A DNA stretch of 64,000 bases from Salisapilia sapeloensis CBS 127946 (Eukaryota; Protista; Oomycota), in assembly GCA_023334545.1 (NCBI GenBank), contig JAADVB010000059.1, positions 1 through 64,000 on the forward strand. The letters run 5' to 3'. A model generated the notes under the pieces. It had not been told where the DNA came from. It made no database searches and saw only the letters and a program-made list of their open reading frames with translations. The translations under genes and the position numbers were made by a program. Shown piece by piece: positions 11,806-33,254 of this stretch. Positions within the stretch are counted from its first letter, which is position 1. Every line of letters begins with the position of its first letter.

Positions 11806-14343
11806 ATGGAAATGGACAGCCTCTTCCTCGCCGATACGGTGGATTTTGCTAGGTATCGGTATGGGTTCATTTCTCAGACTTGGAATTTGTATGGAAGCTC
11901 ACAAATGGCTGAAAAGACCACCAATGGAAAGGGTAGTGGAGACACTCGTCTCCAGTGGCTGCGACGGATAAATGACGCGGTCAGTACTGCCACTAGGCAA
12001 GTCTTCCAGTCGGCACCATCCGTGCAACGCAATAGGCGCTTTGGATTGACTGGAAATGCACCGAAATTACCAGAACTGGAGCCGATTTTGGAGCTAGTCC
12101 GGTTTCCATCCACTTGTGTAACTGGCAAGAAACGTAAGCGACACATTCGCTTCGTTCGAGATATTCTGAGAGATCCTAAAGTGCAATGGCTTAGTCGAAG
12201 TTCCATTGAAAGTGGTGTATGCAATGCTTTGTGCCGAGAGCTACTATCTTATGTCGAAAATGCTCGAAGTCAGGAGCAGGAAGCAGATGTAGCACACGGT
12301 GATGCTGTGGCTGCAATGATCTGCCATATCATACTCGATTCATTGCTGTCTACGTGTGACAACTTGATGGGCAAATGTAGTGTACCATGTCAGTGGAAGT
12401 TCCTGGAGAAACCTCCGTTTCATGCCATGCCGTGTTTCTCACGATGGGAGACACTGCTTCCACTACTACAACGTTTAGCTGTCGAGGAACCTGCTATATT
12501 GGATCAAGTTGTCCAGTGCTACACTGTCGTCCCAATGGCCAAGGTCAATTGCTACTTTGCACATGCATACGGATTATGTCGGTTACTTGAGACGCTCGCA
12601 GCTACCGACAGCGATCTACATTCCCAGCATGCACAAACCTCCAGTACCATCCTTTCGTTTATTATCAATAAGCGAGTGCTTCGGATCGTACAAGAAGAAG
12701 ATGAACTCTCTGATTCGACCGCAAGTTTTGACGATTTACTTTTCTCGAAATTCTTTCACTACTTACAAAACTACTTGGTCATCTCCAAGACAGCAAAAAA
12801 CATTGCATCCCAGGCGCTCGTAAGCTCACTCGTTTCCACGCTGAAAACAAGTACATTCTCAATGTCAAAGACGATGCGAATCCGATGCGGCTACTTTGCA
12901 ACTACAGCCTGCATCCAAATAAGTGAATTCCCGTCTCTGATGATAGAGCAGGTACTCGCTATGGTCGATGCAAGAGGTGAGGGCGAAGAGGATGCAGCAT
13001 CTAGCAAGCAATTAGCAATCCTTGGATTTCTATCCAATCTCTGCGCCCACGTAGATAACATTGAGCTGGCAAATATCTTCCAGGTGCTCCAGAGCATCCT
13101 CGCATGCTACCAGCAAAAGCAGATAGACGAACAGACCAGACTCGCGTTTTTGTTCTTGATACTATATGTAGCTGTCCATCGCTACAAGCTACTTCCACCT
13201 CCAGCTGTATTTAATGAAGACAATGACTTCCAAGTACAAGCGAGTATTCGAGCATTACAATTGCAACGAACAAAGTTTCAGGACCACGTCCTCGTCTACG
13301 TCGAATACGAGGACTTCTACCTCATGCCAGTTCATTGGATGCAAATCTTTTGGCAGCACTGGTTCCTATTGCTAGACGCAGACATCCAGTCATTCCTACG
13401 TGATGCGATTGCATTCCAAGTTGACAGGACGACTAATGTTCAGACGCCAAAGAGAGCATGGAAACATGTCTTACGTCTCTTACCACTACGTAAGCATTTG
13501 CATCCTGCATCTGTCAACCTTGGCAAAATCATCTACCCTCACCTTGTCCAACCCGTTCCTTTCGAGCCACTCTCAAGCAATCCAGAGATGCAGTCGAGAA
13601 AGCATTTTATACAGCAGGAGTGTAAGCGACAGCTGAAGCGAAGGCGAGTCGAGACTTTTGAAACGGAGGAAGAAATGACGCGGAAATTGAACGTTCTACT
13701 GCTTCCAGACATAATGGAGCGTGTTTGCTCCTACCTGACGGCCAAGCGATTGTGTCGAATGTCTCTCGTTTCACGTGACTTTTATCCGATTGTACAGAAC
13801 CCGCAAGTATGGAAGCACGTGTGGTTTCAACTGACGAAAGACTTTCCAGTGGTGTGTCACCACGGTCCGTGTTACGTACATGATTGGAAGGAGATGTATA
13901 AAGAGCGTCTTCGATCTGTATCCAAGCTGCGTAAAGGACCGCTCGTGAGCCGAAGGAAGCCTGTGCATGCAACAACTGATAGTGCTTTCGATTCATCAAG
14001 TGACCCAAATCAACGGCGGCTGTGGAAGATCTGTACAGTATGCGGATGTAATCGTATTCTTTCAACTCCTACCAAGTTACTAGACCATTTAGAAGTGCAT
14101 GAGCAGTTCACTTGCACAGACGAATCTTGCCGTGCGTCGTTTACGTCTAAAAAGCTTTGGACAGAACATATCAAATCCAATCACACGTTAAAGGAGATGG
14201 ATGCGGCGAAGCAAACGAAGGATGACAGTGGGAAGTTCTTGTGTGGTTTTCCAGGTTGCAAGAAAGTATATACATCCGTCCTGTGGCTTCAAAAGCATCG
14301 AGAGAAACAAGGACATTTCGCAAGCGAAGAGACGAACGAATAG
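11806..14343 (+). CDS. Large protein with a central-to-C-terminal F-box and three C2H2 zinc fingers
   Basis: F-box LLLPDIMERVCSYLTAKRLCRMSLVSRDF...W. Fingers CTVCGC...HLEVH, CTDESC...HIKSNH and CGFPGC...HREKQGH. Intronless 845 aa. Confidence 0.85.
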   Translation: MEMDSLFLADTVDFARYRYGFISQTWNLYGSSQMAEKTTNGKGSGDTRLQWLRRINDAVSTATRQVFQSAPSVQRNRRFGLTGNAPKLPELEPILELVRFPSTCVTGKKRKRHIRFVRDILRDPKVQWLSRSSIESGVCNALCRELLSYVENARSQEQEADVAHGDAVAAMICHIILDSLLSTCDNLMGKCSVPCQWKFLEKPPFHAMPCFSRWETLLPLLQRLAVEEPAILDQVVQCYTVVPMAKVNCYFAHAYGLCRLLETLAATDSDLHSQHAQTSSTILSFIINKRVLRIVQEEDELSDSTASFDDLLFSKFFHYLQNYLVISKTAKNIASQALVSSLVSTLKTSTFSMSKTMRIRCGYFATTACIQISEFPSLMIEQVLAMVDARGEGEEDAASSKQLAILGFLSNLCAHVDNIELANIFQVLQSILACYQQKQIDEQTRLAFLFLILYVAVHRYKLLPPPAVFNEDNDFQVQASIRALQLQRTKFQDHVLVYVEYEDFYLMPVHWMQIFWQHWFLLLDADIQSFLRDAIAFQVDRTTNVQTPKRAWKHVLRLLPLRKHLHPASVNLGKIIYPHLVQPVPFEPLSSNPEMQSRKHFIQQECKRQLKRRRVETFETEEEMTRKLNVLLLPDIMERVCSYLTAKRLCRMSLVSRDFYPIVQNPQVWKHVWFQLTKDFPVVCHHGPCYVHDWKEMYKERLRSVSKLRKGPLVSRRKPVHATTDSAFDSSSDPNQRRLWKICTVCGCNRILSTPTKLLDHLEVHEQFTCTDESCRASFTSKKLWTEHIKSNHTLKEMDAAKQTKDDSGKFLCGFPGCKKVYTSVLWLQKHREKQGHFASEETNE

Positions 14344-15730: not shown

Positions 15731-16157
15731 TGAATAAAGGAGATTAAAATGAAGCAGCAAGGATATCATAACACGTCTACTTTCTTTCCATTCCTTCGTG
15801 CAACTGCATTTGCATGCACGCTTTGTTCGATCTAGGATCCTCCATCTATTTCCGCTATCTTCAAGTTGCTTTCCAACATCATAGAAAGAAGATAAATATA
15901 GTCATACTCTCCGTTATAGCTACCTCTACATCCTTTACCATCTCTCTGTATCTACCTAAGACTCTTCTACATCTAAATCCTCTTCTTCAAAATAGCCATG
16001 GGTCGACCACCAGCTCTACCTCGAACTAAATGCCCGACCTTCACTCGCCAAACCTCGTTCTCAGTATATGTTGTAAACTTCAGCCTTTTCCGAACCAAAC
16101 CAACAATTCCTCCTAAGTTTCCTCATAAATCAAGAATCCCCGTGCGACGCAAGCGTG

Positions 16158-19100
16158 ATGGGGGTCAAGGGTCTCCAGACCTTTTGCTTCAACCACGAGG
16201 ATGAGCTATCGACTTTCCTCGACAAGATCTCCAACGTCACGCTTGCCGTCGACTACGATGGTTTCGTCAACTACTTGTGTGAACGTCTGTACGTAGCTGC
16301 TGCCACGGAAAGCGGGCTTTCGTCTCGCGCCTGGTTGCTCTTCGGTGGATGTCCTGACCGGCTTGAAGCGTGGATCACGACGTGGCTCAATGCTATGAAG
16401 AAGCAAGATATTAGTCTCATCTTTGTCCGTGACCCACCACGTTGTTTCGGTGGAGAAGCACAGGCGCATCGAAAAGGATGGACGTGGGTGGACCGAAATG
16501 CGCAAAAGAACAAGCGTGTTGCGAAACTAGTAGATCAGTTATTCTCGTCAGCGTCTGGGGAAATGTGCATGACCACGAGCAACGTCAAGGAGACTGAAAA
16601 TTTATTACATGGCGCGAATGGCGTATTTCCTTTTGCTAGCGAAAAGCTGCGTGGCACTTTGATGAAGCACGGTATTTCCGTCCGCCTTGCTCAACGTGAA
16701 GCAGATGAAGATCTAGCTCAACTCGTACGGACCGATAAGGCGTATGCAGTGCTTGGTCAGGACTCGGATTTCTTTTGCATGCCATCTGTTCGATACATCC
16801 CTTTTAGCTACATTGAGGTGCCGATGATGCACTCTGAGAGTCCTCCAAAAGCACGTATCTTCTATTCTACCATTTTAGCGCAGGCGCTTGGACTGGAGGA
16901 CAAGCAGCTCGTGGATCTCGCAATCGTTTGTGGCAATGACTTTACGCCTCCGATCGATGAAGAGTTTGGTCTTGCCAAAAAACTCGACTTCCCAGACCCA
17001 CGACCAACTAGATACGTGGATCCAATGGATGCGGCGGAATGGATTCGAGAGCACGGGTCTATCTGTCAGCACTTCCTATTGCCTATTTTGGAAACGCAAG
17101 CACCTGGTGTCATGACGGCTTTGTTCGAAATCTATCGTTTCTACGGGCAAGAAGACTTTTTCATGGAAAATTGCCCCGATCCGTCGGTACTACGGCCGGT
17201 GCAATTATCCAAGAAAAAGCGCAAAAGCTACTCGAGCCTTATTAACAACTTTAACTACCCTCTCATGGCTTTCGACGTCATTGAATCCAAGAACCGGCGA
17301 CTTTCGTCCAAGTACGACCCGCTCCAAGTCCATCCGTCGGCGGACGTTGGTAATAACTGGGTCGATCTACTTGCACCGGTGCGTAAGATGTTTTATTCTA
17401 CATTAAATGCCAGTCACGTCACGGAGATCGACACACGATCGGACGGTAGTAGAACGGTCGATGTGAAGATACCGAAATACCTTCAAAACTTTTTAAAACT
17501 GCCAATGGGCCAACGCTCTGGCAAAGCTCTCAATGACGTCCTTCGATCGATGGTCCTAAAAGAACTTTATGGGAACCCGAATGGCGTCGGTCCAGCCCAG
17601 TCGTTGACAGATATGTTTGGAAACCCGAATAAGAATGGCTTGGTCACGCGTACATTTGCCTACGCACTGCTGTTATTAATCAAGTGTGCCCCCTTGGACA
17701 TTGATGGCAGTCCACTAGTAACTGGTCGACGCATGGACCTGCTCTTAATTACGTCCATCGTTTGTGTGCACTCCAAGTCTGTTACTCAACGCGGTAACCA
17801 CGCTCCAAAGAACCCACCGACGCTTTTATCGGACAATCAAGTTCAGTGGGGAGATGCCGCAGTCGTTGCAGGATATATTGAGCTTTTAAGACTCGTCTAC
17901 TACATGCGCATTGTTCTTGGAGAAAAGATGCCTCCAAACGCCGGCTGCGCATCGTACTTTTCCTCTGAAGTCTTTGCCAAAGTGGCATCTACTGCAGAAC
18001 TAGCACGAGATATGTCACGTAGCAAGTCGGTTAGCTTTGAAAAGAAAGAGTTACGTATCATATTGGAAGAATTCAAGCCGCAGCTACAGATGTCGGTTGC
18101 CAATATAGCAAGTCTGTACTCCAACATTCGTGCTTCAATGGACAAAATGGTGAAATTGATGCCAAAGAAAGATCCGATTGCACAAGTCACGTCCAAACTA
18201 GATGCGATGCAACTACACGAGTCGAGTGAGAATAGTTCCGAGATGGATGCTTCCATCTCGGATGTTCCATCTACGCCAACTTCCACCAAATTATCTCCTA
18301 TCCATACGTCGCCATCCACTTCGGAAACTAGTCAGACTCCATCTCGGATGTCAAGTCTCATCCCTTCATCTGTCACCAAGAGGACATCTGCGAAAACTTC
18401 GTCTCCATCTCCAACTGCACAAACTCCTTCGCCAACATTAAGAGCACCGTCTGCAGAAATTATCAATCAGTCTCCGACTGCAGCCATGGAAGACAAGCTT
18501 TCTTCTCCCGATGAAAACGTTTCGGAAGAGCTTGCACCCACTCCACATGCCGAAAAAGATCTCACAGGTCTTATCAAAACGCTACCTGTGTATGCTCACC
18601 GACAGGAGATCATCGATACAGTATCCAAGAACCAATTGACGGTCATCCAGGGTGAAACTGGATGTGGTAAAAGCACGAGCGTTCCGCAATTCTTGTACGA
18701 TGCGTGGACGGAACGGAACCAATCTGTGAATGTGTATGTGACGCAACCTCGTCGTATCGCTGCCATCGAACTCGCATCGACTGTCGCCAAGATGCGGAAG
18801 AACAATAAGCAAGGGGAGGATGGAAAGCTTGGTAGCACGATTGGTTACCGTATTGGTCAGAAACAGGTCGTGTCGTCCAAGACCAAGATCACGTATGTCA
18901 CGACAGGGTACATGGTAGAACGTCTGATCCACAATGCCGAATCCCTTCAGTCCGTCACGCACATTGTTCTCGATGAAGTCCATGAACGCAGCATGGATGT
19001 CGACTTGCTCCTCCTTCTCCTGCGCCTAAACGCTGCCAATTACCCCAATCTCCGCCTCGTCATCATGTCTGCTACCATGGACGCACGAGTGATCGTAAAA

Positions 19101-21671
19101 TACTTTAAGCAGCATCTGGCTGCTCCCCTCCTCCGCGCAAAGCCTTTATTCGTCGGAACGAAATTGTATCCGGTCGAATATGTTTTCTTAGATAAGCTAA
19201 AGCAGTACTTCCCAGAGATGGCTCGATCTTATGGCAAGAAAATTAATGAAGTGACGAACCATTGCGGAAAGCTCGTGAGCCAAAACGCAATGGCAGGAAG
19301 TGACGTGGCGCGTCAAGCGATTTCGAAGACACATCAAGCGCAGCTTGAATTGATTCCACATATGGTGCGCAGTCTTATCGAGAAGCATCGTCAGGATAAA
19401 GACCATCGGCTGCCGGAATCGCAGTGTATCCTCATCTTTGTCCCTGGCATCAACAGCATCAATACGCTATACGAGACGCTGTCTCCCATGACGCCGAGGT
19501 ACAATGGCGAGCCTGTCCGACTGCTCGTCCTCCACTCTGGTATTGAGCTCGAGAACCAGGAAGAAGCGTTCCAAGTGCACTCTGGTCGAGCGACGAAGAT
19601 TGTGCTATCGACAAACATTGCCGAGAGTAGTGTGACGATCCCAGATGTTACGCATGTGATTAATTGCGGCGTGGAAAAGAATATTGAAATGCCCAACGCT
19701 GGTAGTAGTCATGCAGAAGTGCTAGTGGACGCCTGGTGTTCTCGAGCGTCCGCTAAGCAACGCTCTGGTCGTGCTGGACGTGTCATGCCAGGCACTGCCT
19801 TCCATCTCATGCCGGAAGAGTTCTTCACCAAGTGTCTAGCCGAGTACTCGACGCCTGAGATCTTGCGTAAGCCCCTTGATCGAACGATTTTGCTATTGAA
19901 AGCCAAGATGAAGGATTATGGTATCCCGAGTGATCTCTTAGCCGAGACACTGAATGCGCCGAGTAAGCAAAATGTCGCTGGTGCATACAGACTGTTGGCT
20001 CGACATGAAGCGTTGGATAGTGACATCGAGACGAAGGCGGAGATGACTCGCTTTGGTGAATTCGTATGCCACATCCCGTTGAGCCTAGAGCTCTGTCGAT
20101 TGTTGATGACAGGTATGTTCGTATCGACAAAGGAGGAAAAAAGTAGTAAGCAAAGCTCTTGGAGGATACTACTGCACACTGTCATTCTCGTAGCTATCCT
20201 ATCAGCTGAAGATCTCTTCACGAAACCGTCGTTCTACCACGCACACAGTCCTTCTAGCTACATGGAAGACATGAAAGAAAATTTAGCTGCGAAGATGGGT
20301 CTGGATAAAGGTGAGTGGAGTGAACCACTATCTATGTGGGCATTCTATTGCCAGATCTTGAGCACGAAACCGAAGGGATTGCAGGATCGTAGGTGGAAGA
20401 TTGCCTTGACGAAGAACTGCATCTCCCATCGTCGTTTCCAGACACTCAACTTTATAGTATCAGACATTTGTGGTCGACTGGTGAGACTCGCGAGGCGAGA
20501 GGAAGGCCGGTTTGGTCAGATGCTGGATGAAGGAGCGGTCAAGATGCTCGGGAAGCTCGAGAACTATGCTTCCTCTCAGAATGCATCCGACCCGCAGCTC
20601 GTGCAAATGGCAAAGAAAGCGTTGCAGACCAACGGGGATGGACGACAGATCACACAAGCACTTCGGTTCCTCATCGTGCATAACTTTGATGAAAACTTGA
20701 TCGTCGGCAAATTCCAACCGTCGAATGCGAAGAAGTCACAAAGTGATACAGAGGAAGCGACGTTGAAACTAGGCAAGGAAGAAGCTGCGAGCTTTGCTTC
20801 GTTAAAGAGTGGGGAGAAGATGTATATGTTTGATCAGCTAGCAACGCAAGAGGAGAATGTCATCAAGGCAGTGCAAGAACAACCGACGAAAATCCGAATT
20901 ACATTCAAGGCCAATCCTCCGACGTCATCGGATATCGCGCCAGAATTTGCACTCCCGTCATTACCTATCTCTCTCTTGCACTATGTTGTCGAGAAGGGCT
21001 TCCCCGTCAACCTCGGACGAGTCGTCTCGCAGGATACGGAGCACAGTCATCGCTTCCGACTGGGAGAGACGTCGACGTGCAAAGTGACGTGGTCGCCGGT
21101 TGCCAAGCAGGGCAGTGTCTACACTACAAGTCGGAGTCTATTTGGTCTGCCGCTGCGTAACTCGGAGGCGACGCAGAAGAAGCAGGCACAGACGCAGTTC
21201 CGAGCTGTGTATGCCGAACGGACGTATCTTGGTGACGAGTCCAAGATGCATGCTGGTAAATGCACGTTGCTGCCGTCGGGTTCGGCAGGCTACTTTCCCA
21301 TCTTGCTGCTACTGACGGCGCGTCGTGGCAAGGGAGTGTTCATCCACGTTGGACAGACGACTGGACAGATTCTGGCTGTGACATTGAATGCTGTCACCAC
21401 TGCGACGATGCCGAAGGGGTATGCACTGGATTGTTCAGTGCTGGATCCAATCAATACCTGCCGTCAAGCACTATCGGACTCTTTCAATGCGAACTCGGAG
21501 TCGGACCGATTGGCCATGGAGCACATCCTTGCATTCACCGACGATGCCAACTACGTCGTGAAGAAATCCGAAGATACATTCAAGATGGTTAAGCTCAATA
21601 TGGCAGGTAGACCAGCAAGTAAGGAGGGTGAGGAGACATTTGAGAGTCGATACCCTCCCTTCGTGGGTTAA
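16158..21671 (+). CDS. Fusion of an XPG/Asteroid/FAM120-like PIN nuclease domain with a DEAH/RHA-family (TDRD9/Spindle-E-like) RNA helicase
   Basis: PIN part: MGVKGL, AVDYDG, FVRD, READEDL, GQDSDFF, CGNDF. Helicase part: GETGCGKST, TQPRRIAA, IGYRIG, DEVHERS, MSAT, IFVPG, STNIAESSVTIPDV, QRSGRAGR, plus an HA2-like segment. Single intronless ORF. Confidence 0.9.
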   Translation: MGVKGLQTFCFNHEDELSTFLDKISNVTLAVDYDGFVNYLCERLYVAAATESGLSSRAWLLFGGCPDRLEAWITTWLNAMKKQDISLIFVRDPPRCFGGEAQAHRKGWTWVDRNAQKNKRVAKLVDQLFSSASGEMCMTTSNVKETENLLHGANGVFPFASEKLRGTLMKHGISVRLAQREADEDLAQLVRTDKAYAVLGQDSDFFCMPSVRYIPFSYIEVPMMHSESPPKARIFYSTILAQALGLEDKQLVDLAIVCGNDFTPPIDEEFGLAKKLDFPDPRPTRYVDPMDAAEWIREHGSICQHFLLPILETQAPGVMTALFEIYRFYGQEDFFMENCPDPSVLRPVQLSKKKRKSYSSLINNFNYPLMAFDVIESKNRRLSSKYDPLQVHPSADVGNNWVDLLAPVRKMFYSTLNASHVTEIDTRSDGSRTVDVKIPKYLQNFLKLPMGQRSGKALNDVLRSMVLKELYGNPNGVGPAQSLTDMFGNPNKNGLVTRTFAYALLLLIKCAPLDIDGSPLVTGRRMDLLLITSIVCVHSKSVTQRGNHAPKNPPTLLSDNQVQWGDAAVVAGYIELLRLVYYMRIVLGEKMPPNAGCASYFSSEVFAKVASTAELARDMSRSKSVSFEKKELRIILEEFKPQLQMSVANIASLYSNIRASMDKMVKLMPKKDPIAQVTSKLDAMQLHESSENSSEMDASISDVPSTPTSTKLSPIHTSPSTSETSQTPSRMSSLIPSSVTKRTSAKTSSPSPTAQTPSPTLRAPSAEIINQSPTAAMEDKLSSPDENVSEELAPTPHAEKDLTGLIKTLPVYAHRQEIIDTVSKNQLTVIQGETGCGKSTSVPQFLYDAWTERNQSVNVYVTQPRRIAAIELASTVAKMRKNNKQGEDGKLGSTIGYRIGQKQVVSSKTKITYVTTGYMVERLIHNAESLQSVTHIVLDEVHERSMDVDLLLLLLRLNAANYPNLRLVIMSATMDARVIVKYFKQHLAAPLLRAKPLFVGTKLYPVEYVFLDKLKQYFPEMARSYGKKINEVTNHCGKLVSQNAMAGSDVARQAISKTHQAQLELIPHMVRSLIEKHRQDKDHRLPESQCILIFVPGINSINTLYETLSPMTPRYNGEPVRLLVLHSGIELENQEEAFQVHSGRATKIVLSTNIAESSVTIPDVTHVINCGVEKNIEMPNAGSSHAEVLVDAWCSRASAKQRSGRAGRVMPGTAFHLMPEEFFTKCLAEYSTPEILRKPLDRTILLLKAKMKDYGIPSDLLAETLNAPSKQNVAGAYRLLARHEALDSDIETKAEMTRFGEFVCHIPLSLELCRLLMTGMFVSTKEEKSSKQSSWRILLHTVILVAILSAEDLFTKPSFYHAHSPSSYMEDMKENLAAKMGLDKGEWSEPLSMWAFYCQILSTKPKGLQDRRWKIALTKNCISHRRFQTLNFIVSDICGRLVRLARREEGRFGQMLDEGAVKMLGKLENYASSQNASDPQLVQMAKKALQTNGDGRQITQALRFLIVHNFDENLIVGKFQPSNAKKSQSDTEEATLKLGKEEAASFASLKSGEKMYMFDQLATQEENVIKAVQEQPTKIRITFKANPPTSSDIAPEFALPSLPISLLHYVVEKGFPVNLGRVVSQDTEHSHRFRLGETSTCKVTWSPVAKQGSVYTTSRSLFGLPLRNSEATQKKQAQTQFRAVYAERTYLGDESKMHAGKCTLLPSGSAGYFPILLLLTARRGKGVFIHVGQTTGQILAVTLNAVTTATMPKGYALDCSVLDPINTCRQALSDSFNANSESDRLAMEHILAFTDDANYVVKKSEDTFKMVKLNMAGRPASKEGEETFESRYPPFVG

Positions 21672-21804: not shown

Positions 21805-22623
21805 ATGATTGGGATTGCTGGAGGCGCCGGACCTGCGGCTGGTATTCTGCTGCAGCAGACGATTTTGAACCAGACCAAGAGTCACGGACGAGACCAAGGT
21901 CACCTGCCAGTGACGCATATATCTAGACCGGCGGACATTGCAGAGCGTGTGAGCTACTTGCTGCCCACGGAGGATGGCAAACCGCGAGGTGAGAGTCCCG
22001 CAATCGGCATGGCAAAGACGTTTAAGTTGCTACGTGCGACGGCCGAGGCTTCGGATGAGCCACTGGTTGTCGGCGTCGCATGCTGTACGTTCCACGCGAA
22101 ACGGACGTGGAAAGAGTTTTGCGACTTGATCGAGTTCGACAATCTCGTCCACGCCTCACCGTCTGTCAAGTGCCTAAACATTGTCGACGAGACCATCCAC
22201 TTCATTAGACAAGAGCTGCCTTCGTGCAAGAAAGTGGGCATTCTCTCGACGACTGGCACGCGCATCGCTGGCGTGTTCGAAGATATTGAAGCTGCTGGCT
22301 TTGCCATCACCCAAGTCCCGGAGTCCATGCAAAGCGAAGTGCAGGACACGATTTCCAATCCCGAGTGGGGCATCAAGAGCTGTGCACCGAACACAAACCA
22401 GCGATGCATTGACAATTGTAAAAAGTTTGCTCGTCAGCTCATCGCTGATGGTGCCGACATCATCGTCTTAGGTTGCACGGAACTTCCGTTTGGTTTCCAA
22501 GCAAGCACAAGTGATGAAGTACCGCTGTTCGAAGGAGCAAGACTCCTTGATCCGATGGTTCCTCTCGCTCGTGCGCTTATACGAGAGACGGACCCGACGA
22601 AGCTGAAACCACTTCCAACATAG
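21805..22623 (+). CDS. Aspartate/glutamate racemase family protein (cofactor-independent, two-cysteine type)
   Basis: MIGIAGGAGPAAG (compare GILGGMGP), ACCTFHA (compare PCNTAH), KVGILSTTGT, IVLGCTELP. Intronless. Confidence 0.88.
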   Translation: MIGIAGGAGPAAGILLQQTILNQTKSHGRDQGHLPVTHISRPADIAERVSYLLPTEDGKPRGESPAIGMAKTFKLLRATAEASDEPLVVGVACCTFHAKRTWKEFCDLIEFDNLVHASPSVKCLNIVDETIHFIRQELPSCKKVGILSTTGTRIAGVFEDIEAAGFAITQVPESMQSEVQDTISNPEWGIKSCAPNTNQRCIDNCKKFARQLIADGADIIVLGCTELPFGFQASTSDEVPLFEGARLLDPMVPLARALIRETDPTKLKPLPT

Positions 22624-22679: not shown

Positions 22680-25600
22680 CTACTCAAAGTCACTGTCGTC
22701 ACCATCCTCCATCTCTTCAAATTCGCTACTGTGCCCACCATCATCCTCGTCGCTCACCAAGTCCGTGTACACGACAGGTTTCTTCGCTCGACCTGCTCGT
22801 CGAGGTGCAATCGGCGCAACCTCCTCCACTTCTTCTTCACTGCCACTCTCCTGCTTCTTGCTAGCAGGCTTTGACTTTGGTTTTGCTTGACTCTTCGAAC
22901 CATTCGCCTTCGTGCCATTCGCCTTCGCACCATTTGCTGGAGCTTTCTTAGGCGTGTTGCTCGGTCGCTTGGCAAGTCGTTCCGCCAACGACAAGTTCTC
23001 CACTTCCTCTTCTGAAGACTCTTTCATAGGCTCTTCCTTCAGCTCTTCCTTTGCTTCTTCCTTCGGTTTAGCTTCAAAGAAGTTTGCGATGCTCGACTTG
23101 GTTTTTGGAGCAGCAGGAGGCTTGGGCTTCGCCGTCATCTTTGGTTTTGCCGCTGTCTTGGGCTTCGCAGGCGATTTCGGTTTCGCCGGTGCTCTCCGTT
23201 TCTTCGGTCTCTCTTCATAGTCCGAGTCTTCACCATCCTTCTTCCGCTTCGTCTTCTTCGGACGCACCTTTTGCACCTTGGACTGCATTTCGACTCGTGT
23301 TTCCTCCGTCTCGACAATCATCTGCTCAAGCTTTTCCAAATCATTCAGCCATAGACTATCTACCGCCGTCGCATCCAACTCGGCATACTCTCTTCGTCTC
23401 TCTTCCACCTCCGACTTGAGTTTATCGACTCTTTCCTTGGTCAAACTCCAGATCTTTAACGACAGCAAGTAATCGTATCCCTTGGCAGCTTCCCCTACAT
23501 CCGTCTCATCATCACTTGACTCCGACTCCTCCTTCTTACTACTCGCCTGGGATTTGATCTGGTCGTAGCCTTCGTCCAGAAGCTGTTGCAAGATATCTTC
23601 TCGCTTCCGATTGCTCACGATCATCTGACCTTCTACGACTGCAAGCACGAAGCGAGCTTTATTCGACAGCAACTTGATTTGGAACGCTAGCTTACTTAGC
23701 ATTGATTCCTTCCGCTTCGCATAAAAGTCCAGACGCAAGTCGTAGAACTCATCAATGACTTCATGCGGGTTCTTGTACTTTTGAATCTGTCCTTCATGAT
23801 CAAACATGTGCATATTGGACGTCGATAATGTCGTTTCGAGTTTAAATTGCTTGATAATACCACCTGGAGCTTCCCGAATCGACTTGAGTCGATTCGGATC
23901 CAATGTCAACGTAAAGAGGACTTTGCTTTCTGTATGATTCTCCTTGAACTCTTTCACCACTTCCTTCTCCACCAGTGATTCTAAAAACGTCTTGTATGGT
24001 TGTGTCCACGTACGAATGGGTAACTCGGTGATCACGAGTGTACTCTCATCCGGTTCTTCATAAGTGCCTTGGACGACGAATGTCTTGCCGCCATCTCGGT
24101 TATTCGTCGGCTTGGCAAAGATCTGACCAGAGAAACCACGATACCAAGGTACAAGTTCCTCCATCTCTTCTCCCTTCAACTTCTTTCTCAAGTTTGCAAT
24201 CAAGTCTAATGGGTTGTAGTTCGGGATGGTGCACGACCAACCTGTACCAATACCTTCATTCCCGTTCACGAGTGCCATGGGGATCACTGGCATGAACCAT
24301 TCCGGCTCAATCGTTTCTCCATCTTCTTGTAGATGGTTTAGGATGTCGTTATCTAACGGATCAAAGATACAGCGAGAGAGTTGCTCGAGGTTTGTGAAAA
24401 TATAACGCGGACTAGCGGCATCTCGTCCGCCCATCAAACGCGTACCGAATTGACCGTTCGGAGACAAGAGATGGATGTTGTTGCTACCTACAAAGTCTTG
24501 TGCCATGTTCACGATCGTCGCGTGAAGACTATTCTCGCCGTGATGGTACGCAGTGTGCTCTGCGACGTAACCAGCGAGCTGTGCGACCTTGATCTCGACC
24601 TTTAAATTGCGTTTAAAGCATGCGTACAACACCTTCCGTTGGGACGGTTTAAACCCATCAACAACGCTCGGAATCGATCGCAAGTTGTCTGCCATGGAAA
24701 AGAGGATGAGCTCTTTGTTCACAAAGTCCGCGTACGGGATTTCGCTCACGTCGTGGTCAATATGATCGCCCAAAGTGTATCCACGCAGCCAATCCTTGCG
24801 TTCCTCCACGCGCTTCTTACTGAAAGCCATATCGATCGAGTCTCCATCCGCTTCTTCACCATACACAAAGTCGATCTGATGCTTGCCCAAGTCGGAAAAG
24901 TACTCTTTCGCCTCGGCATTGGAGCTCGTACCGAGACCTTTATAGTACTTGATTTTCCATCCACGTCCGTGATTCGTACTCTCACGCCATGCTTCGTACT
25001 CTGGCATGGTAAAGAACACTTTCTTCTGCGTACCTTTAGTGCATTTGACAATCGGCGTAATAAACTCTTGCAAAAAGCCTTCGATACGTAGCAAGGATGG
25101 CCAAAAGTGATGGATAAAGTTGATCACGAGACCTTTGATGTGGCTACCGTCGTGATCTTGATCTGTCATCACCATCAAGTGACCATATCGCAGACTCTTC
25201 GTGTTGTCGTACGTCTCGCCGACCCTCAGTCCGAGGATCTTGATCAAGTTCTGGATCTCTGCGTTTTCCATAATCTGCTTATGACTCGCTTCTCGAACGT
25301 TCAAAAGCTTTCCACGGAGAGGGAAGACACCGTACTTGTCTCTACCGACGACTGCCAAACCACCAACAGCAGTACTCTTGGCTGAGTCCCCTTCCGTCAG
25401 AATCAACGTACATTCTTTTCCTTTAGCTGTGCCAGCCCAATTCGCATCATCCAGCTTCGGGATACCAAGTAGCTTGACTTTGCGACCACTGCTGCCACCC
25501 TTTCGGCGTAGTGCAGCGGTTTGTTTAAACTCGGCAAAAGAAAGAATGCGATCCACAATGCCACTTTTTGCGATTTTTTTCATAAATCCATCGCTCAAAG

Positions 25601-27063
25601 TATACGTCGATCCAAATGAATTCGGACGAGTCGTAAGTGTTTCCTTGGTCTGAGAGTCAAAAGCTGGATTCTCGATCAAGGCATTTACGTACACCATGAG
25701 ATGATTTTTAATATACGAAGGTTTGACGCCGTCATTCTTCTTCTTCACGGCAGCACTGAGCTTGGCTGTGATCTGGTCTGTGATATAGTTCACGTGCTGT
25801 CCGCCTTTCGTGGTACAAATGCCGTTCACAAAGCTGATTTGTTGGAAACTGTCGTCACTAAGTGCAACTCCGACTTGCCATCTCTCACCCGGCTTGTCGA
25901 AGAACACCTCGGGTTCACTATTTGAGGCGTCTCCAGATTTTGTGCCACTTGGAGAAGGATACATCTTTACATACTCTGCAAACGTACGCACAGGCACGAG
26001 TTCACCGTTCAAGTAGACCTTGAGCGACTTATCAGATACGCCAGCAATATCGTAAACGCGCTTTTTAAAGAGCGCAATGATATCTCTATCCAGCTTGTCC
26101 ATTTGGAAACGCTCCAGATCGGGTTTGAATGAAATGCAAGTGTAATCCTTTTTAGACCACGAAGTGATCTTCGGCTTGTTAATCTTCCCCATATTGTCCG
26201 TAAAAACTTGCTTGTACTTGAGTTGGTTGCTCTTGTCTGCTGTCTCTACGGTGAATTCTGTCGAAAAAATATTCGCAAGCTTTGCACCATATCCATTCCG
26301 TCCTCCCGTTGTCTTCTTCTGCTTGTCGTTAAAATTGCTGCCCGTAAGCAAGTTACCAAAGATAAGCTCTGGCACATACACTTTGTGCTCTTTGTGCATG
26401 ACGACTGGGATACCGCTACCATTATTCCAAACAGAAATGCGATTATCCTCAGAACTAATGTCCACTTTCAAAGTGTTCATCGTCTTGTCGCGTTGCTTAT
26501 TATCGTACGCATTGACAATAATTTCGTCAAAAATCTTGTACAAACCAGGGATCTACACGTACATCGAGCACTTAGTCATAAGCGATCAACCAATTATTTA
26601 AGCAATACTTACAAACGTGATCTTTCGGTATTCCATCTTCTTACTTTCATCGTCAAAGACCCACATGTCCTGTGTCACGTGCTCCGTCGACCCAACGTAC
26701 GTGTCCGGTCGCAAGAGAATGTGTTCGATAGGAGTCTTCTTCTGGTAGATTTCCTCTACACTTTGCCCATTCTCGTCTACGCCAGTACCATCCATGGCGT
26801 CATCTTCATCGTCACCACTCGACTGCTTGCTACCACCCGTTTTCTTACTCGTAGCACCAGTCAACGTCGTCTGCTTTGTCTTAGCCGGAGCTTTCTTTTT
26901 CGCAGGCTGCTTCTTTGGTGGAGGAGATGCCTCGTAGTCGCTCACATCCTCCTCTCCGTCCGACGAGATTTCGTATGCCTACGTTCACATATCACAAGGT
27001 CATATATACAGCTATAGGGTAGAACTACAATGTAGGTTAGAGGTATACCTCTTCAGAATCCAT
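22680..27063 (-). CDS. TOP2: DNA topoisomerase II (3 exons: 27063-27049, 26978-26613, 26552-22680)
   Basis: IEHILLRPDTYVGS, KIFDEIIVNAYDN, GGRNGYGAKL, LILTEGDSA, PLRGKLLN, MTDQDHDGSHIKGL, YYKGLGTS, AASPRYIF (catalytic Tyr), and a Lys-rich C-tail. Confidence 0.98.
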
Positions 27064-27288: not shown

Positions 27289-30200
27289 TGACGCTGAAAA
27301 GCTTTTGGACGACATCCTTTTGCTTTGCGCTCTTCGTTTCCTGTACGCTTTATATGCCTTTGTATGGAGAAGAGGATGTGACTTCTATGCTGTATTCGTC
27401 GAGTCGATGCACAGAAGTGTCTCGAACGAACGCATGCCGAAATTATGAACGTTGCAAGGAAACTCATCGATGTGCACGAGGAGTGGAAGGTATATTCCTT
27501 TTGAATGGTCTTCATTTTTTCGATTAATCAGTTTTGTACGTAGAGTATCGTATAAGAGAAGCACAACTTCATAGTTATACTAATCAATATCCTGGAGGAC
27601 AGCAACATGCAATCGCTTTATCGAGCGATTTTGAAGATTGGAAAGCTGGATCGCATCAGTGGGACATTACGCGAGGTAAAGAACGCTATAGTGACTATCT
27701 TATACACTGCAAATAATGCTTCGGACTTGCATTAGTAGACAAAACGAGTGCTTCTACCCATCTCATGGGCTGGGATACATATTCCTTCCCCTTGATCGGA
27801 TCTCTGGAGCTATCGAAAGGTTACCTTCTATTTGACACGGATACAGCCCAGCTATCTGGCGACATGACACTGAATGGAACTATTGCTAAGACAAGAAACG
27901 GTACCCTGGTGACTGTTTTCAACTTTCTCACAGTTTATCTCGGTCCTGATGTCCGAGTACGATTCAAAGGGCACAACGCGATCGCCATTTTGTCTCGCAG
28001 TAGTATGCTTATAAACACCGACATGAAAGTACGCCCAGGGACACTAGGAGGCTTTCCTGGTGGCGGCTATGTCGGTTATGATGCTACTAATAACAATCGA
28101 AATGGACCAGGAAGTTCAAATGTACGAGTGTACGTGGAAACCTTGTCGACATATGCTACCCATGTACCAGAAGTGCAAGAGATTGAAACAATCGTTGGTG
28201 AAGGCCAGCGATTAGGAGGCTATTTTAGATTATTAGATCATACATCCAGTCTATCAACGTCAAGAATCGATTACGATACGAACGCTGAAACTCTTGAACA
28301 TATTCTGGAGACTGCATTTTCAAATATTGGACAGATACATGTTCATCAGGAACGTGAAGAGGGTGAAATCTGGTCAGAAGTTGGACGCCTATGGAGAATC
28401 ACGTTTTTAACCGCAGTGGGTAATGTACCTCAGCTCCAAGTGGAAAGTAAACTGACAGGAATTGGTGCGGATGTATTGACAAGAACAATACGGGAAGGAA
28501 ACCAACTTGGAGGGACATTTCAGCTGCAGTTTCTAAACAAAATAACGAGGCCGCTTGCACATGATGTCAGTGCTCATGACCTTCGTAGTGCTCTTTTACA
28601 AGACTTTCCATTCCTTGTGGACGCAAAAGCTACCAGGACAGATCCATTATCCAGTTGTAATCAAGGATCCACTCTTCCTGATCAAAGGGCAGTATCGACA
28701 ATGTCCATTTTACAAGATGCTCTTCTTTATCCATCTAATTGGACTACCCCATCCAAGCAACTAGTGTATGATCCAGAAAGTCTAAAACGCTACCAGGACA
28801 GAGTTTGTTCAAATGGCCGTGGGGGAGCGGATGGGTATGTATGGAAACTTCAGTTGTGGACAAGAGTCGGTAGCAAGTCTTCAACGAGTCCAAAGGCTGA
28901 TGCTTATGGTCAAATAGACGCTGTAGAAGAGCTACGTGTCGTCGACAGTGGCCTAAGTGGAGAAGGAGCACTAGCAGAAGTAGTTCATTCGGGCGCATTT
29001 ACTTTATCTTTCGGTGGTGGTGGTGCTTCTTTTACAAATACAGGTGGGAACGGATACATTCATGCCCAAATGGATGTAAGAGAGATCTATGCAGATCGAT
29101 ATATTTCGGATTTAATTGCCGGTAGTGGTGGGAGTGGAGGCGGGACAGAGCCTTTGGACATGTACCCTCTTCTACAACCGCCACTAGGAGGTGCTGGCGC
29201 TGGAGCTATGCTACTATCTGCTGTAAACGATGTTGTCATTGGGTCTCACGGGCGTATTCAAGTAAATGGTGGTAATGGTATGTCCTCCGCAAATGCTGGA
29301 GGCGGAGGCTCAGGTGGTACCATTCTCATCGTGAGCCAAGGTACTGTCAGCCACCATGGCTCAATACAAGCCGTTGGAGGGCATGGTGGCACTTCATCTT
29401 TGCCTTCTACATCAACTTCTCATAGATATGCAGGCGGTGGTGGAAGTGGAGGTAGGATCGCCATCTACGCGCAAAGCTACTCTGCATGGGGTGAAGGTAC
29501 TCTTGAACTCAATGGTGGATCTTCACAAGACTTGTCACAAAGTGGAGGTAGAGGGACATTGTATATCCATGTGCAGACAAACCTTGCGTATCGTGTAGAT
29601 CCTACCATAGGTGCTGCCGGAACGTTTAAATCACTTTTGGTTAGTGGTGCCGAATCCTATCAGTATGGAAAAGAGGGTTCTTTAGATGGCATGAATCAAA
29701 TGAGCTTAAATGGACCAAGATATCGTATCGACAATGACACACATCGCCGACCGACTCGGATATCATATTTTGTTCGCATCGGGAATTTTGATCATGGCAA
29801 CATTGGTTCCAATCGCGGTGCACTCTTTGGTGTCCATCGAGGTTACGATGATGCTGATAAGGAGGGAGAAGAACTGTTGGTTGGAATTGCTATTGTCAAT
29901 GGAAACTTTGTATACGAGTCGAACACATTTGGATGGCCGCGACGCGTCTTTCAGCGAAAGATAGAGCCTAAGAGATGGTATAAGGTTGACGTGTACCTTA
30001 ATTGGGACTTGCACCACTACTCTATTTACCTAAACGATGTTCTTAAAGTCTATCAGACTCGATTTGACGGAGAGCAAGTATCAGCTATTAGTCTAAATAA
30101 CTTTCATCCGATGTCTATTTGGTGGGATGAAATTTATGTCGGTGAAAGCTTCTTGATGAACTTTGTCTGTCCATCCGTGTCACTCTTCCCCTCTTCTATT

Positions 30201-33200: not shown

Positions 33201-33254
33201 ACTGTGGTTTATCAGCCAGATCAATATGAAGATTCGCTTGGCGGTGGTACTTGA
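27289..33254 (+). CDS. Giant secreted protein: Gly-rich repeats, two oomycete-type repeat modules, lectin-like beta domain, GH43_24-like propeller interrupted by 5 EF-hands
   Basis: Signal-like MTLKSFWTTSFCFALFVSC. Two short 5' exons splice into the 1829-aa ORF. GH43-like IYWYSE, DRPKAIYNPKTKKFVLWFH, AGVATS...GPF, RDQT and later ISRLSEDYL. EF loops DPNEDGKITSYE, DVNNDGEITFSE, DLDKNGYLDENE, DPSFDGRVYYSR, DFDNSETLTQDE. Confidence 0.8.

What the first reader, a model, noticed from the sequence alone, without database searches (positions are those of the whole stretch)
16158..21671. PIN/XPG-like nuclease fused to a TDRD9/Spindle-E-like DEVH RNA helicase: candidate one-polypeptide RNA unwinding and cleavage machine
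Seen in sequence: one intronless 1837-aa ORF. It starts MGVKGL and retains the acidic residues of the XPG/FEN-like PIN fold: AVD at about 16248, FVRD, EAD at about 16698, DSD at about 16758, and the H3TH-like CGNDF at about 16930. A Ser/Thr/Pro-rich linker follows, then a complete DEAH/RHA helicase (Walker A about 18651, DEVH about 18971, SAT, QRSGRAGR about 19758, HA2-like) and a roughly 400-aa unrecognised C-terminus. Established knowledge: Asteroid/FAM120 PIN proteins are normally stand-alone, and TDRD9/Spn-E and plant DExH8 helicases work in small-RNA or transposon silencing with Tudor or CCCH partners rather than a PIN domain. Inference: this may be a lineage-specific silencing or RNA-surveillance effector. 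I do not know of a characterised protein with this architecture.
Basis: partly seen in the sequence, partly recalled or inferred. Interest (0 to 1): 0.85.

Follow-up and report, generated by a model that had tools for sequence, protein, structure and literature searches.

The report
Ancient flap-nuclease plus Spindle-E-like helicase fusion

Summary
Window 16158-21671 (+) is one uninterrupted 1837-aa ORF, and every motif sits at the stated coordinates.

- **aa 1-345:** a FEN/XPG-superfamily 5' nuclease. All seven acidic residues and the arch Lys/Arg are conserved in 99 of 100 full-length family members. Its closest stand-alone relative is FAM120B/SAN1.
- **aa 346-690:** a confidently folded helical domain with no recognisable relative.
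- **aa 691-800:** a Ser/Thr/Pro-rich linker.
- **aa 801-1242:** a complete DExH helicase core.
- **aa 1243-1837:** It models as a divergent winged-helix/ratchet/OB tail most like Spindle-E and DHX36.

A maximum-likelihood tree puts the helicase core in a clade of PIN-helicases that is sister to animal Spindle-E/TDRD9 (support 100/99), not with DHX29/DHX57 or DHX36.

The fusion is not lineage-specific. It occurs throughout oomycetes and in a sponge, a choanoflagellate, a malawimonad, a jakobid, a glaucophyte, a green alga and many marine eukaryote contigs.

I found no paper describing it. The most likely mechanism is inferred, not shown: 3'-to-5' unwinding exposes a 5' end or flap, which the tethered nuclease cuts. 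Whether the substrate is RNA or DNA/R-loops is open.

The parts
16158..21671 (+). Complete intronless CDS, 1837 aa plus stop: a PIN(FEN/SAN1-like) nuclease fused to a DExH helicase
   Evidence: Full-length colinear orthologs at 37-50% identity.
16158..17192 (+). aa 1-345: FEN/XPG-superfamily 5'-nuclease domain. Catalytic D32, D92, E181, D183, D202, D204, D261; arch K106 and R113; H3TH-like GNDF.
   Evidence: Pfam XPG_I above cut-off. Profile vs PDB: FEN1 4e-11, EXO1, XPG, GEN1. AF2 pLDDT 88. Foldseek top hits FEN1/EXO1/Rad2. Catalytic residues present in 99/100 fusions. hhalign to FAM120B prob 99.1.
17193..18227 (+). aa 346-690: mostly helical middle domain with no recognisable relative. Its first ~80 residues are shared across the wider family; the rest is oomycete-specific.
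   Evidence: High-confidence AF2 model. No Pfam or PDB sequence hit. The 'mid' HMM hits oomycete orthologs strongly, Saprolegniales/Albugo weakly, and only two unnamed short contigs besides.
18228..18557 (+). aa 691-800: Ser/Thr/Pro-rich, variable-length, presumably disordered linker
   Evidence: 51% S+T+P. pLDDT below 50 from aa 693. Length varies between orthologs.
18558..19883 (+). aa 801-1242: DExH (DEAH/RHA) helicase core, RecA1 and RecA2, with motifs I, Ia, Ib, II (DEVH), III (SAT), V and VI (QRSGRAGR)
   Evidence: Pfam DEAD and Helicase_C. PDB: DHX29 1.8e-69, Spindle-E 1.5e-65, DHX9, DHX36. Motifs conserved in about 95-100% of 100 fusions. Phylogeny.
19884..21668 (+). aa 1243-1837: divergent winged-helix / ratchet (HA2-like) / OB-like tail plus further beta-rich C-terminal subdomains
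   Evidence: AF2 pLDDT 75.6, pTM 0.83. Foldseek: Spindle-E 6.8e-7 (TMq 0.49), DHX36, DHX29, DHX37, MLE. Sub-threshold HA2_C at one consistent position in 22/26 orthologs. HA2_C above cut-off in the Gefionella member.

Best explanation
The gene encodes a real, conserved, two-enzyme protein. It is a 3'-to-5' DExH translocase/helicase of the Spindle-E-related lineage, joined by a flexible ~110-aa linker to an N-terminal FEN1/SAN1-type metal-dependent 5' nuclease. Shown here: both active sites are complete and almost invariant across about 100 family members from several eukaryotic supergroups. The fusion is therefore old and under selection as an enzyme pair. Inferred mechanism: the helicase loads on a 3' single-stranded tail and moves 3'-to-5'. 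That peels the complementary strand away starting from its 5' end. The resulting free 5' end or 5' flap is what FEN-superfamily nucleases thread through their helical arch and cut. ATP-driven unwinding would thus feed the displaced strand to the tethered nuclease. I favour an RNA or RNA-containing duplex as substrate (structured RNA, dsRNA, RNA:DNA hybrid). That implies a role in RNA surveillance or silencing-type genome defence, because the motor's nearest characterised relatives are RNA helicases. This last step is the least certain.
For: The ORF and motifs are verified. In the nuclease, all seven acidic residues plus K106 and R113 are invariant in A2 and present in 99/100 full fusions, including 47/47 non-oomycete members, apart from one K-to-R at K106. 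The profile aligns K106/R113 with FEN1 K93/R100. The AF2 model is confident and its Foldseek top hits are FEN1 and EXO1. The nearest stand-alone relative is FAM120B, an active 5' exonuclease on ssDNA and 5' flaps that works with the helicase SETX (PMC6030175). In the helicase, all motifs are conserved and the C-terminal tail folds like Spindle-E/DHX36 tails. The tree places it sister to Spindle-E/TDRD9 at 100/99. The same domain order recurs in oomycetes, sponge, choanoflagellate, malawimonad, jakobid, glaucophyte and chlorophyte proteins, and in single transcripts. The 3'-to-5' polarity of DEAH/RHA helicases and the 5'-end threading of FEN nucleases are established knowledge of those families.
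Against: There is no biochemical, expression or genetic data for any member. Substrate type is not determinable from sequence. SAN1 acts on DNA, and DHX36 and DHX9 also act on DNA G-quadruplexes and R-loops. Coupling of the two activities on one substrate is inferred only from the fusion. The long flexible linker would also allow independent action. Several alveolate and euglenid sequences inside the clade lack the PIN domain in the available models, so the helicase can evidently function without it. The tree sampled only insect Spindle-E and lacked YTHDC2, DHX30 and vertebrate TDRD9.
Confidence: 0.55

Rival explanations
1. It is a DNA-repair or R-loop enzyme: a built-in version of the SAN1-senataxin partnership. 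The helicase would unwind RNA:DNA hybrids or DNA structures, and the nuclease would trim the resulting 5' ssDNA flap. The role would be in cross-link repair or transcription-replication conflict repair rather than RNA silencing.
For: The nearest stand-alone relative of the nuclease domain is FAM120B/SAN1: hhalign prob 99.1 and 30% identity over 220 columns; 80 bits for FAM120B against 45 bits for FEN1. [quoted passage not shown] An H3TH-like duplex-binding motif (GNDF) is retained. Related DExH helicases such as DHX36 and DHX9 are known to act on DNA G4s and R-loops (established knowledge).
Against: The helicase core is sister to Spindle-E/TDRD9, an RNA-pathway helicase. Homology to FAM120B stops at the nuclease domain, and the FAM120B C-terminal region needed for its activity is absent. 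FAM120A and Mkt1, relatives in the same superfamily, are RNA-associated. There are no localisation data.
Confidence: 0.3
2. The N-terminal PIN-like domain is a non-catalytic RNA- or protein-binding adaptor, as proposed for Mkt1 or FAM120A. The protein would then be simply an RNA helicase with an unusual targeting module.
For: Several FEN-like PIN proteins have lost catalysis and act as adaptors (Mkt1: PMC7026591, PMC12345631). Some clade members appear to lack the domain altogether.
Against: All seven acidic residues and the arch Lys/Arg are kept in 99/100 members across very deep divergences, while the rest of the domain falls to about 20% identity. That pattern is expected for an active enzyme, not for a scaffold.
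Confidence: 0.1
3. The ORF is an assembly or annotation artefact joining two genes, or the helicase is an ordinary DHX29/DHX57-type translation helicase that happens to lie next to a nuclease gene.
For: DHX29 is the best-scoring PDB sequence hit, 238 bits against 225 for Spindle-E. One ortholog carries the automated name of the S. pombe DHX29-like protein.
Against: The frame is continuous with no stop over 5.5 kb. The same order and spacing occur in more than 50 oomycete proteins, in unrelated eukaryotes and in single transcriptome contigs. The tree separates the clade from DHX29/DHX57 with 100/99 support.
Confidence: 0.02

Closest known systems
SAN1 / FAM120B (senataxin-associated nuclease 1)
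   Same: FEN-superfamily N-terminal nuclease domain with the MGVxGL start and seven acidic residues. It is 30% identical over about 220 columns. It works functionally with a helicase (SETX) on 5' ssDNA flaps (PMC6030175).
   Different: SAN1 is stand-alone and binds an SF1 helicase in trans. Here the nuclease is fused to an SF2 DExH helicase. No homology extends beyond aa ~267, so the FAM120B C-terminal region is absent.
Spindle-E / TDRD9
   Same: Sister clade of the helicase core, support 100/99. Best structural match of the C-terminal tail: 9nhs_G, E 6.8e-7, TMq 0.49. DEVH motif II.
   Different: No Tudor domain was detected in this protein or in the sponge, choanoflagellate, malawimonad or jakobid members. 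Spindle-E has no PIN domain. Spindle-E acts with PIWI proteins, which oomycetes lack (my own knowledge, not tested here). Forcing Spindle-E into one clade with the two holozoan PIN-helicases is rejected, p-AU 0.0015.
FEN1 / EXO1 / XPG (Rad2 family)
   Same: Same fold and same catalytic constellation, including the equivalents of arch K93/R100 and the H3TH motif.
   Different: Only about 15-17% identity. No PCNA-type partner motifs were examined. A ~345-aa helical extension and a helicase are added.
Other nuclease-helicase fusions (Dna2, WRN, Cas3, Dicer, archaeal Hef, bacterial PhoH2 PIN-ATPase)
   Same: The same logic: a motor and a nuclease in one polypeptide. PhoH2 also pairs a PIN-type RNase with an RNA helicase-like ATPase (PMC5499597).
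   Different: The nuclease folds differ (PD-(D/E)XK, DEDD, HD, RNase III, XPF), or it is a VapC-type PIN. The helicase families also differ. I found no example of a FEN-type nuclease joined to a DEAH/RHA helicase.
DHX29 / DHX57 / DHX36
   Same: Comparable pairwise scores to the helicase core, about 265-275 bits and 33-36% identity. Similar WH/ratchet/OB tail.
   Different: They fall in separate, well-supported clades. Their accessory domains (UBA/RWD/zinc finger, DSM, dsRBD) are absent here.

Membership tests
FEN/XPG (Rad2) superfamily 5' nucleases (FEN-like group of PIN-like domains) | Seven conserved active-site carboxylates | tested here: met
   D32, D92, E181, D183, D202, D204 and D261 align with FEN1 D34, D86, E158, E160, D179, D181 and D233. 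They are invariant in A2 and present in 99/100 fusions.
FEN/XPG (Rad2) superfamily 5' nucleases (FEN-like group of PIN-like domains) | Helical arch/gateway carrying a conserved Lys and Arg | tested here: met
   K106 and R113 align with FEN1 K93/R100. Helices are predicted at aa 106-128 and 140-154. Lys is conserved in 98/100 and Arg in 99/100.
FEN/XPG (Rad2) superfamily 5' nucleases (FEN-like group of PIN-like domains) | Overall fold and Pfam XPG_I match | tested here: met
   XPG_I scores 30-32 bits against a cut-off of 24.9. Foldseek top 50 are FEN1, EXO1, Rad2 and XPG, E down to 1e-7, TM (target) 0.5-0.63.
FEN/XPG (Rad2) superfamily 5' nucleases (FEN-like group of PIN-like domains) | Metal-dependent 5' nuclease activity | not testable with these tools
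   Needs biochemistry.
FAM120 / SAN1 | Nuclease domain closest to FAM120 among stand-alone proteins | tested here: met
   The best named stand-alone hit of the A2 profile is 'constitutive coactivator of PPAR-gamma' at 80 bits. hhalign prob 99.1, E 1.6e-18.
FAM120 / SAN1 | FAM120-type central and C-terminal regions | tested here: not met
   The hhalign match ends at aa 267, with nothing beyond.
Asteroid (Pfam XPG_I_2) | Match to PF12813 | tested here: not met
   No PF12813 hit for the window protein even at E<=1. Only sub-threshold hits appear in Albugo and one unnamed ortholog.
DEAH/RHA (DExH) helicases | Helicase motifs I, Ia, Ib, II (DExH), III, V, VI | tested here: met
   All are present, invariant in orthologs, and about 95-100% conserved in 100 fusions.
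DEAH/RHA (DExH) helicases | C-terminal winged-helix, ratchet (HA2) and OB-fold domains | tested here: met
   Met at the structure-prediction level: Foldseek to Spindle-E, DHX36, DHX29, DHX37 and MLE over about 540-580 columns. Sequence evidence is weak: HA2_C is sub-threshold in 22/26 orthologs and OB_NTP_bind is not detected.
TDRD9 / Spindle-E | Helicase core groups with TDRD9/Spindle-E | tested here: met
   It is the sister clade at 100/99, not nested inside Spindle-E. Sampling was limited to insect Spindle-E.
TDRD9 / Spindle-E | C-terminal Tudor domain | tested here: not met
   No PF00567 in the window protein, its orthologs, or the Sycon, Salpingoeca, Gefionella or Andalucia members.
TDRD9 / Spindle-E | Acts in the PIWI/piRNA pathway | not testable with these tools
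   By my own knowledge oomycetes have AGO-clade Argonautes only. This was not examined here.
DHX29 / DHX57 | Helicase core falls inside the DHX29/DHX57 clade | tested here: not met
   DHX57 plus DHX29-like form their own clade, separated from the PIN-helicase plus Spindle-E clade.

The most novel reading that the evidence does not exclude
The PIN-helicase family would be a very old, possibly LECA-age, self-contained 'unwind-and-cut' effector of RNA-based genome defence, and the closest surviving relative of the ancestor of the animal piRNA helicase Spindle-E/TDRD9. On this reading, animals kept the motor, swapped the cis nuclease for a Tudor domain, and outsourced cleavage to PIWI and trans-acting nucleases. 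Oomycetes and many protists would still use the original one-polypeptide machine, for example against transposons or viral or double-stranded RNA.
Probability: 0.15. Interest if true: 0.85.

Novelty: new variant of a known kind. Interest (0 to 1): 0.62.

Why it matters
Nuclease-helicase fusions such as Dna2, WRN, Cas3 and Dicer are central machines of genome maintenance and defence. This one pairs two well-understood catalytic modules in a combination that I found described nowhere. Its absence from the literature may be because it is missing from the standard model organisms: among named hits I saw no fungal, land-plant, arthropod or vertebrate member. It is nevertheless conserved, with both active sites intact, in oomycete plant and animal pathogens, a sponge, a choanoflagellate and several deep protist lineages. 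It also gives the animal piRNA helicase Spindle-E/TDRD9 a non-animal sister family. And it turns the SAN1-senataxin nuclease-plus-helicase partnership into a Rosetta-stone-type fusion. Both links are directly testable with recombinant protein and with knockouts in tractable oomycetes.

Tried and rejected
1. Exact-sequence look-ups of the window protein and of a neighbouring protein found nothing. The source species stays unidentified. It is an oomycete of the Phytophthora/Pythium side, about 63-65% identical in the helicase core to its closest orthologs.
2. Profile searches of the C-terminal 595 aa against PDB sequences gave only marginal hits: Spindle-E 4e-4 and DHX29 1e-3, covering the first ~110 residues. 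The structure prediction was needed to recognise the tail.
3. The middle domain (aa 346-690) has no Pfam, PDB-sequence or FAM120B counterpart. The Foldseek list for the 700-aa model was filled by FEN-domain matches, so the middle domain could not be searched alone.
4. The idea that Spindle-E arose from the holozoan PIN-helicases was tested. Forcing Spindle-E, Sycon and S. urceolata into one clade was rejected, p-AU 0.0015. That constraint also forced the two holozoan rows together, so it is a harsh test.
5. Assignment to DHX29 on the basis of the best PDB score was rejected by the tree.
6. Literature searches for the architecture returned nothing relevant. They covered the PIN superfamily classification, XPG+DEAH+oomycete, Phytophthora silencing helicases, Spindle-E origin, Spindle-E+Phytophthora, and Pfam-name co-occurrence.
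7. Genomic context is ordinary housekeeping and gives no functional hint: topoisomerase II, an Asp/Glu racemase and an F-box/C2H2 protein.
Full report
**Observation.** The window holds one uninterrupted ORF at 16155..21671 on the + strand. Its first ATG is at 16158, one codon after the upstream stop, giving 1837 aa. Pfam reports XPG_I at aa 172-261 (30.3 bits, cut-off 24.9), DEAD at 814-977 and Helicase_C at 1088-1209. GC content of the gene (0.49-0.51) is close to that of its surroundings. Neighbouring ORFs are ordinary eukaryotic genes packed tightly: topoisomerase II, an Asp/Glu racemase and an F-box/C2H2 protein.

**Orthologs and gene model.** A whole-length search found about 40 full-length proteins of 1815-2061 aa at 37-50% identity with the same Pfam trio. 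They come from Phytophthora, Peronospora, Hyaloperonospora, Bremia, Plasmopara, Peronosclerospora, Globisporangium, Pythium and Lagenidium. They align colinearly from the first to the last residue. The single-ORF gene model is therefore correct, and the source is an oomycete. The exact protein is not in the collection.

**N-terminal nuclease.**
- In an alignment of 30 oomycete and 7 distant N-termini, the invariant columns are M1, G2, G5, D32, D92, K106, R113, P158, E181, A182, D183, D202, D204, D261 and Y326.
- A profile of this alignment hits FEN1 (4e-11), EXO1, Rad2/XPG and GEN1 in the PDB. It aligns K106/R113 with FEN1 K93/R100 and GNDF with the H3TH GSDY.
- The AlphaFold model of aa 1-700 is confident: pLDDT 88.2, pTM 0.89. 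Its best structural matches are FEN1, EXO1, Rad2 and XPG.
- Across 100 proteins that carry a complete N-domain and a near-complete helicase (53 oomycete-like, 47 others), each of the seven carboxylates, K106 and R113 is present in 98-99 of 100. This is the signature of an active enzyme.
- The nearest stand-alone relative found is FAM120B, annotated 'constitutive coactivator of PPAR-gamma'. The organism name is cut off in the output at 'Festuc...'. It scores 80 bits. hhalign gives probability 99.1 and 30% identity, but only over aa 1-267.
- FAM120B is SAN1, a 5' exonuclease for ssDNA and 5' flaps. Its D90A mutant is inactive, and it binds the helicase senataxin (PMC6030175).
- The Asteroid model XPG_I_2 does not match the window protein.

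**Middle domain and linker.** Residues 346-690 fold confidently into a mainly helical domain with no detectable relative. Residues 691-800 are 51% Ser/Thr/Pro, vary in length between orthologs and are predicted disordered.

**Helicase.**
- All DExH motifs are present and conserved.
- The best PDB sequence matches are DHX29 (1.8e-69), Spindle-E (1.5e-65), DHX9, DHX36 and MLE. The match ends near aa 1321.
- The remaining C-terminus gives only marginal sequence hits.
- Its model (pLDDT 75.6, pTM 0.83) matches the WH/ratchet/OB tails of Spindle-E (E 6.8e-7, TMq 0.49), DHX36, DHX29, DHX37 and MLE.
- HA2_C is sub-threshold at one consistent position in 22 of 26 orthologs. It is above cut-off in the Gefionella member.
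- The 'unrecognised' C-terminus is therefore a divergent standard DEAH/RHA tail plus extra beta-rich subdomains.

**Distribution.**
- An exhaustive profile search with the N-terminal alignment found 4301 proteins at E<=1e-3 and 149 at E<=1e-30.
- Of the best 150 cluster representatives, 95 carry the nuclease domain followed by a DExH helicase. The rest are mostly short fragments.
- Named members outside the first set:
  - other oomycetes: Albugo laibachii and A. candida, Saprolegnia parasitica and S. diclina, Aphanomyces invadans, A. euteiches and A. stellatus, Thraustotheca, Pythium insidiosum and Nothophytophthora;
  - outside oomycetes: Sycon ciliatum (sponge, also in its NCBI genome annotation), Salpingoeca urceolata (choanoflagellate), Gefionella okellyi (malawimonad), Andalucia godoyi (jakobid), Cyanophora paradoxa (glaucophyte), Cymbomonas tetramitiformis (green alga) and MMETSP transcripts.
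- Several of these are single transcriptome contigs, which shows one mRNA in those species.
- The fusion is therefore ancient or at least very widely spread. It is not lineage-specific.
- Among named hits I saw no fungal, land-plant, arthropod or vertebrate member. This is an observation on the lists returned, not a proof of absence.

**Phylogeny of the helicase core.**
- A region-restricted search returned named DHX57, Spindle-E/TDRD9 and DHX29-like proteins, all at about 264-275 bits.
- I built an IQ-TREE tree (LG+C20+F+G4 by PMSF; 81 rows, 515 columns; DHX34 as outgroup; four very long-branched rows left out).
- It recovers a clade of all PIN-helicases plus some protist sequences without a PIN domain (100/99). 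This clade is sister to insect Spindle-E/TDRD9 (100/100), and the joint clade has 100/99 support.
- DHX36 plus dsRBD-bearing DHX9-like helicases, and DHX57 plus DHX29-like helicases, are separate clades. The quick tree agrees.
- Caveats: only insect Spindle-E was sampled, and YTHDC2, DHX30 and vertebrate TDRD9 were not available.
- Forcing Spindle-E together with the sponge and choanoflagellate PIN-helicases is rejected, p-AU 0.0015.
- Dinoflagellate, Vitrella, Euglena and Diphylleia sequences inside the clade lack the PIN domain in the available models. This reflects either real losses or truncated models.

**Mechanism.**
- Shown: there are two intact, co-conserved catalytic modules in fixed order, joined by a flexible tether.
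- Established knowledge: DEAH/RHA helicases translocate 3'-to-5' on single strands. FEN-superfamily nucleases act on free 5' ends or flaps threaded through the helical arch.
- Inference: a motor moving 3'-to-5' on one strand peels the partner strand from its 5' end. This generates the nuclease's preferred substrate, so the protein would unwind and cut the displaced strand.
- RNA versus DNA cannot be decided here. The motor's relatives favour RNA. The nuclease's nearest characterised relative, SAN1, favours ssDNA and R-loop-linked repair. I give the RNA-centred reading a modest edge.

**Comparison and novelty.** Motor-nuclease fusions are a known kind of machine: Dna2, WRN, Cas3, Dicer, Hef and PhoH2. 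SAN1-senataxin is a known nuclease-helicase partnership in trans. A FEN-type nuclease fused to a DEAH/RHA helicase is, as far as my searches reach, undescribed. Databases do list the domain trio automatically. I rate it a new variant of a known kind.

**Verdict.** The domain identities and the Spindle-E affinity are right. 'Lineage-specific' is wrong. The silencing function is untested.

Noticed in passing
window 27765-33254 (+): A second very long uninterrupted ORF of 1829 aa. Its only Pfam matches are EF-hand pairs near aa 1317-1411, and the rest is unannotated.
   Followed up: partly
window 22680-26543 (-): Topoisomerase II ORF: HATPase_c, DNA_gyraseB, Toprim, TOPRIM_C and DNA_topoisoIV. 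The ORF starts inside the ATPase domain at profile position 7, so the true start probably lies upstream, behind an intron or an earlier start codon. Its 3' end lies only 56 bp from the 3' end of the convergent Asp/Glu-racemase gene at 21805-22623.
   Followed up: no
window 8084-9904 (-) and 11806-14343 (+): A protein combining a Methyltransf_FA-like region with an NCBP3/RNA-binding domain, and an 845-aa protein with an F-box plus a weak C2H2 zinc finger.
   Followed up: no
P0307 (Lagenidium giganteum, 1012 aa): A second Lagenidium protein with the helicase core and C-terminal tail of this family but no nuclease or middle domain. It groups with the full-length Lagenidium fusion in the tree. It is either a PIN-less paralog or a truncated gene model.
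   Followed up: partly
P0324 (Symbiodinium 'spn-E'), P0333/P0356 (Biecheleria and kin), P0340 (Vitrella), P0323 (Euglena gracilis), P0325 (Diphylleia): Sequences nested inside the PIN-helicase clade that lack the PIN domain in the available models. This suggests repeated loss of the nuclease, or N-terminally incomplete models.
   Followed up: partly
P0319 (ocean contig, 1663 aa) and P0312 (Biecheleria cincta, 2383 aa): Related helicase cores with other N-terminal partners. P0319 has an R3H domain (PF01424). P0312 has an RtcB-type domain (PF01139) and what looks like two helicase cores. The motor has evidently been recombined with different RNA-handling modules.
   Followed up: no
P0020 (Phytophthora lilii, 2330 aa) and P0044 (P. 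cactorum, 3007 aa): Database gene models of the ortholog that are fused to neighbouring genes. P0020, for example, carries an N-terminal P-type ATPase piece (PF16209). These are probably annotation chimeras, unlike the clean ORF in this window.
   Followed up: no
window 17208-17225 (aa 351-356, KKKRKS): A short basic cluster resembling a classical nuclear localisation signal at the start of the middle domain. Orthologs keep a looser K-rich patch here. It is too weak to use as evidence for localisation.
   Followed up: no
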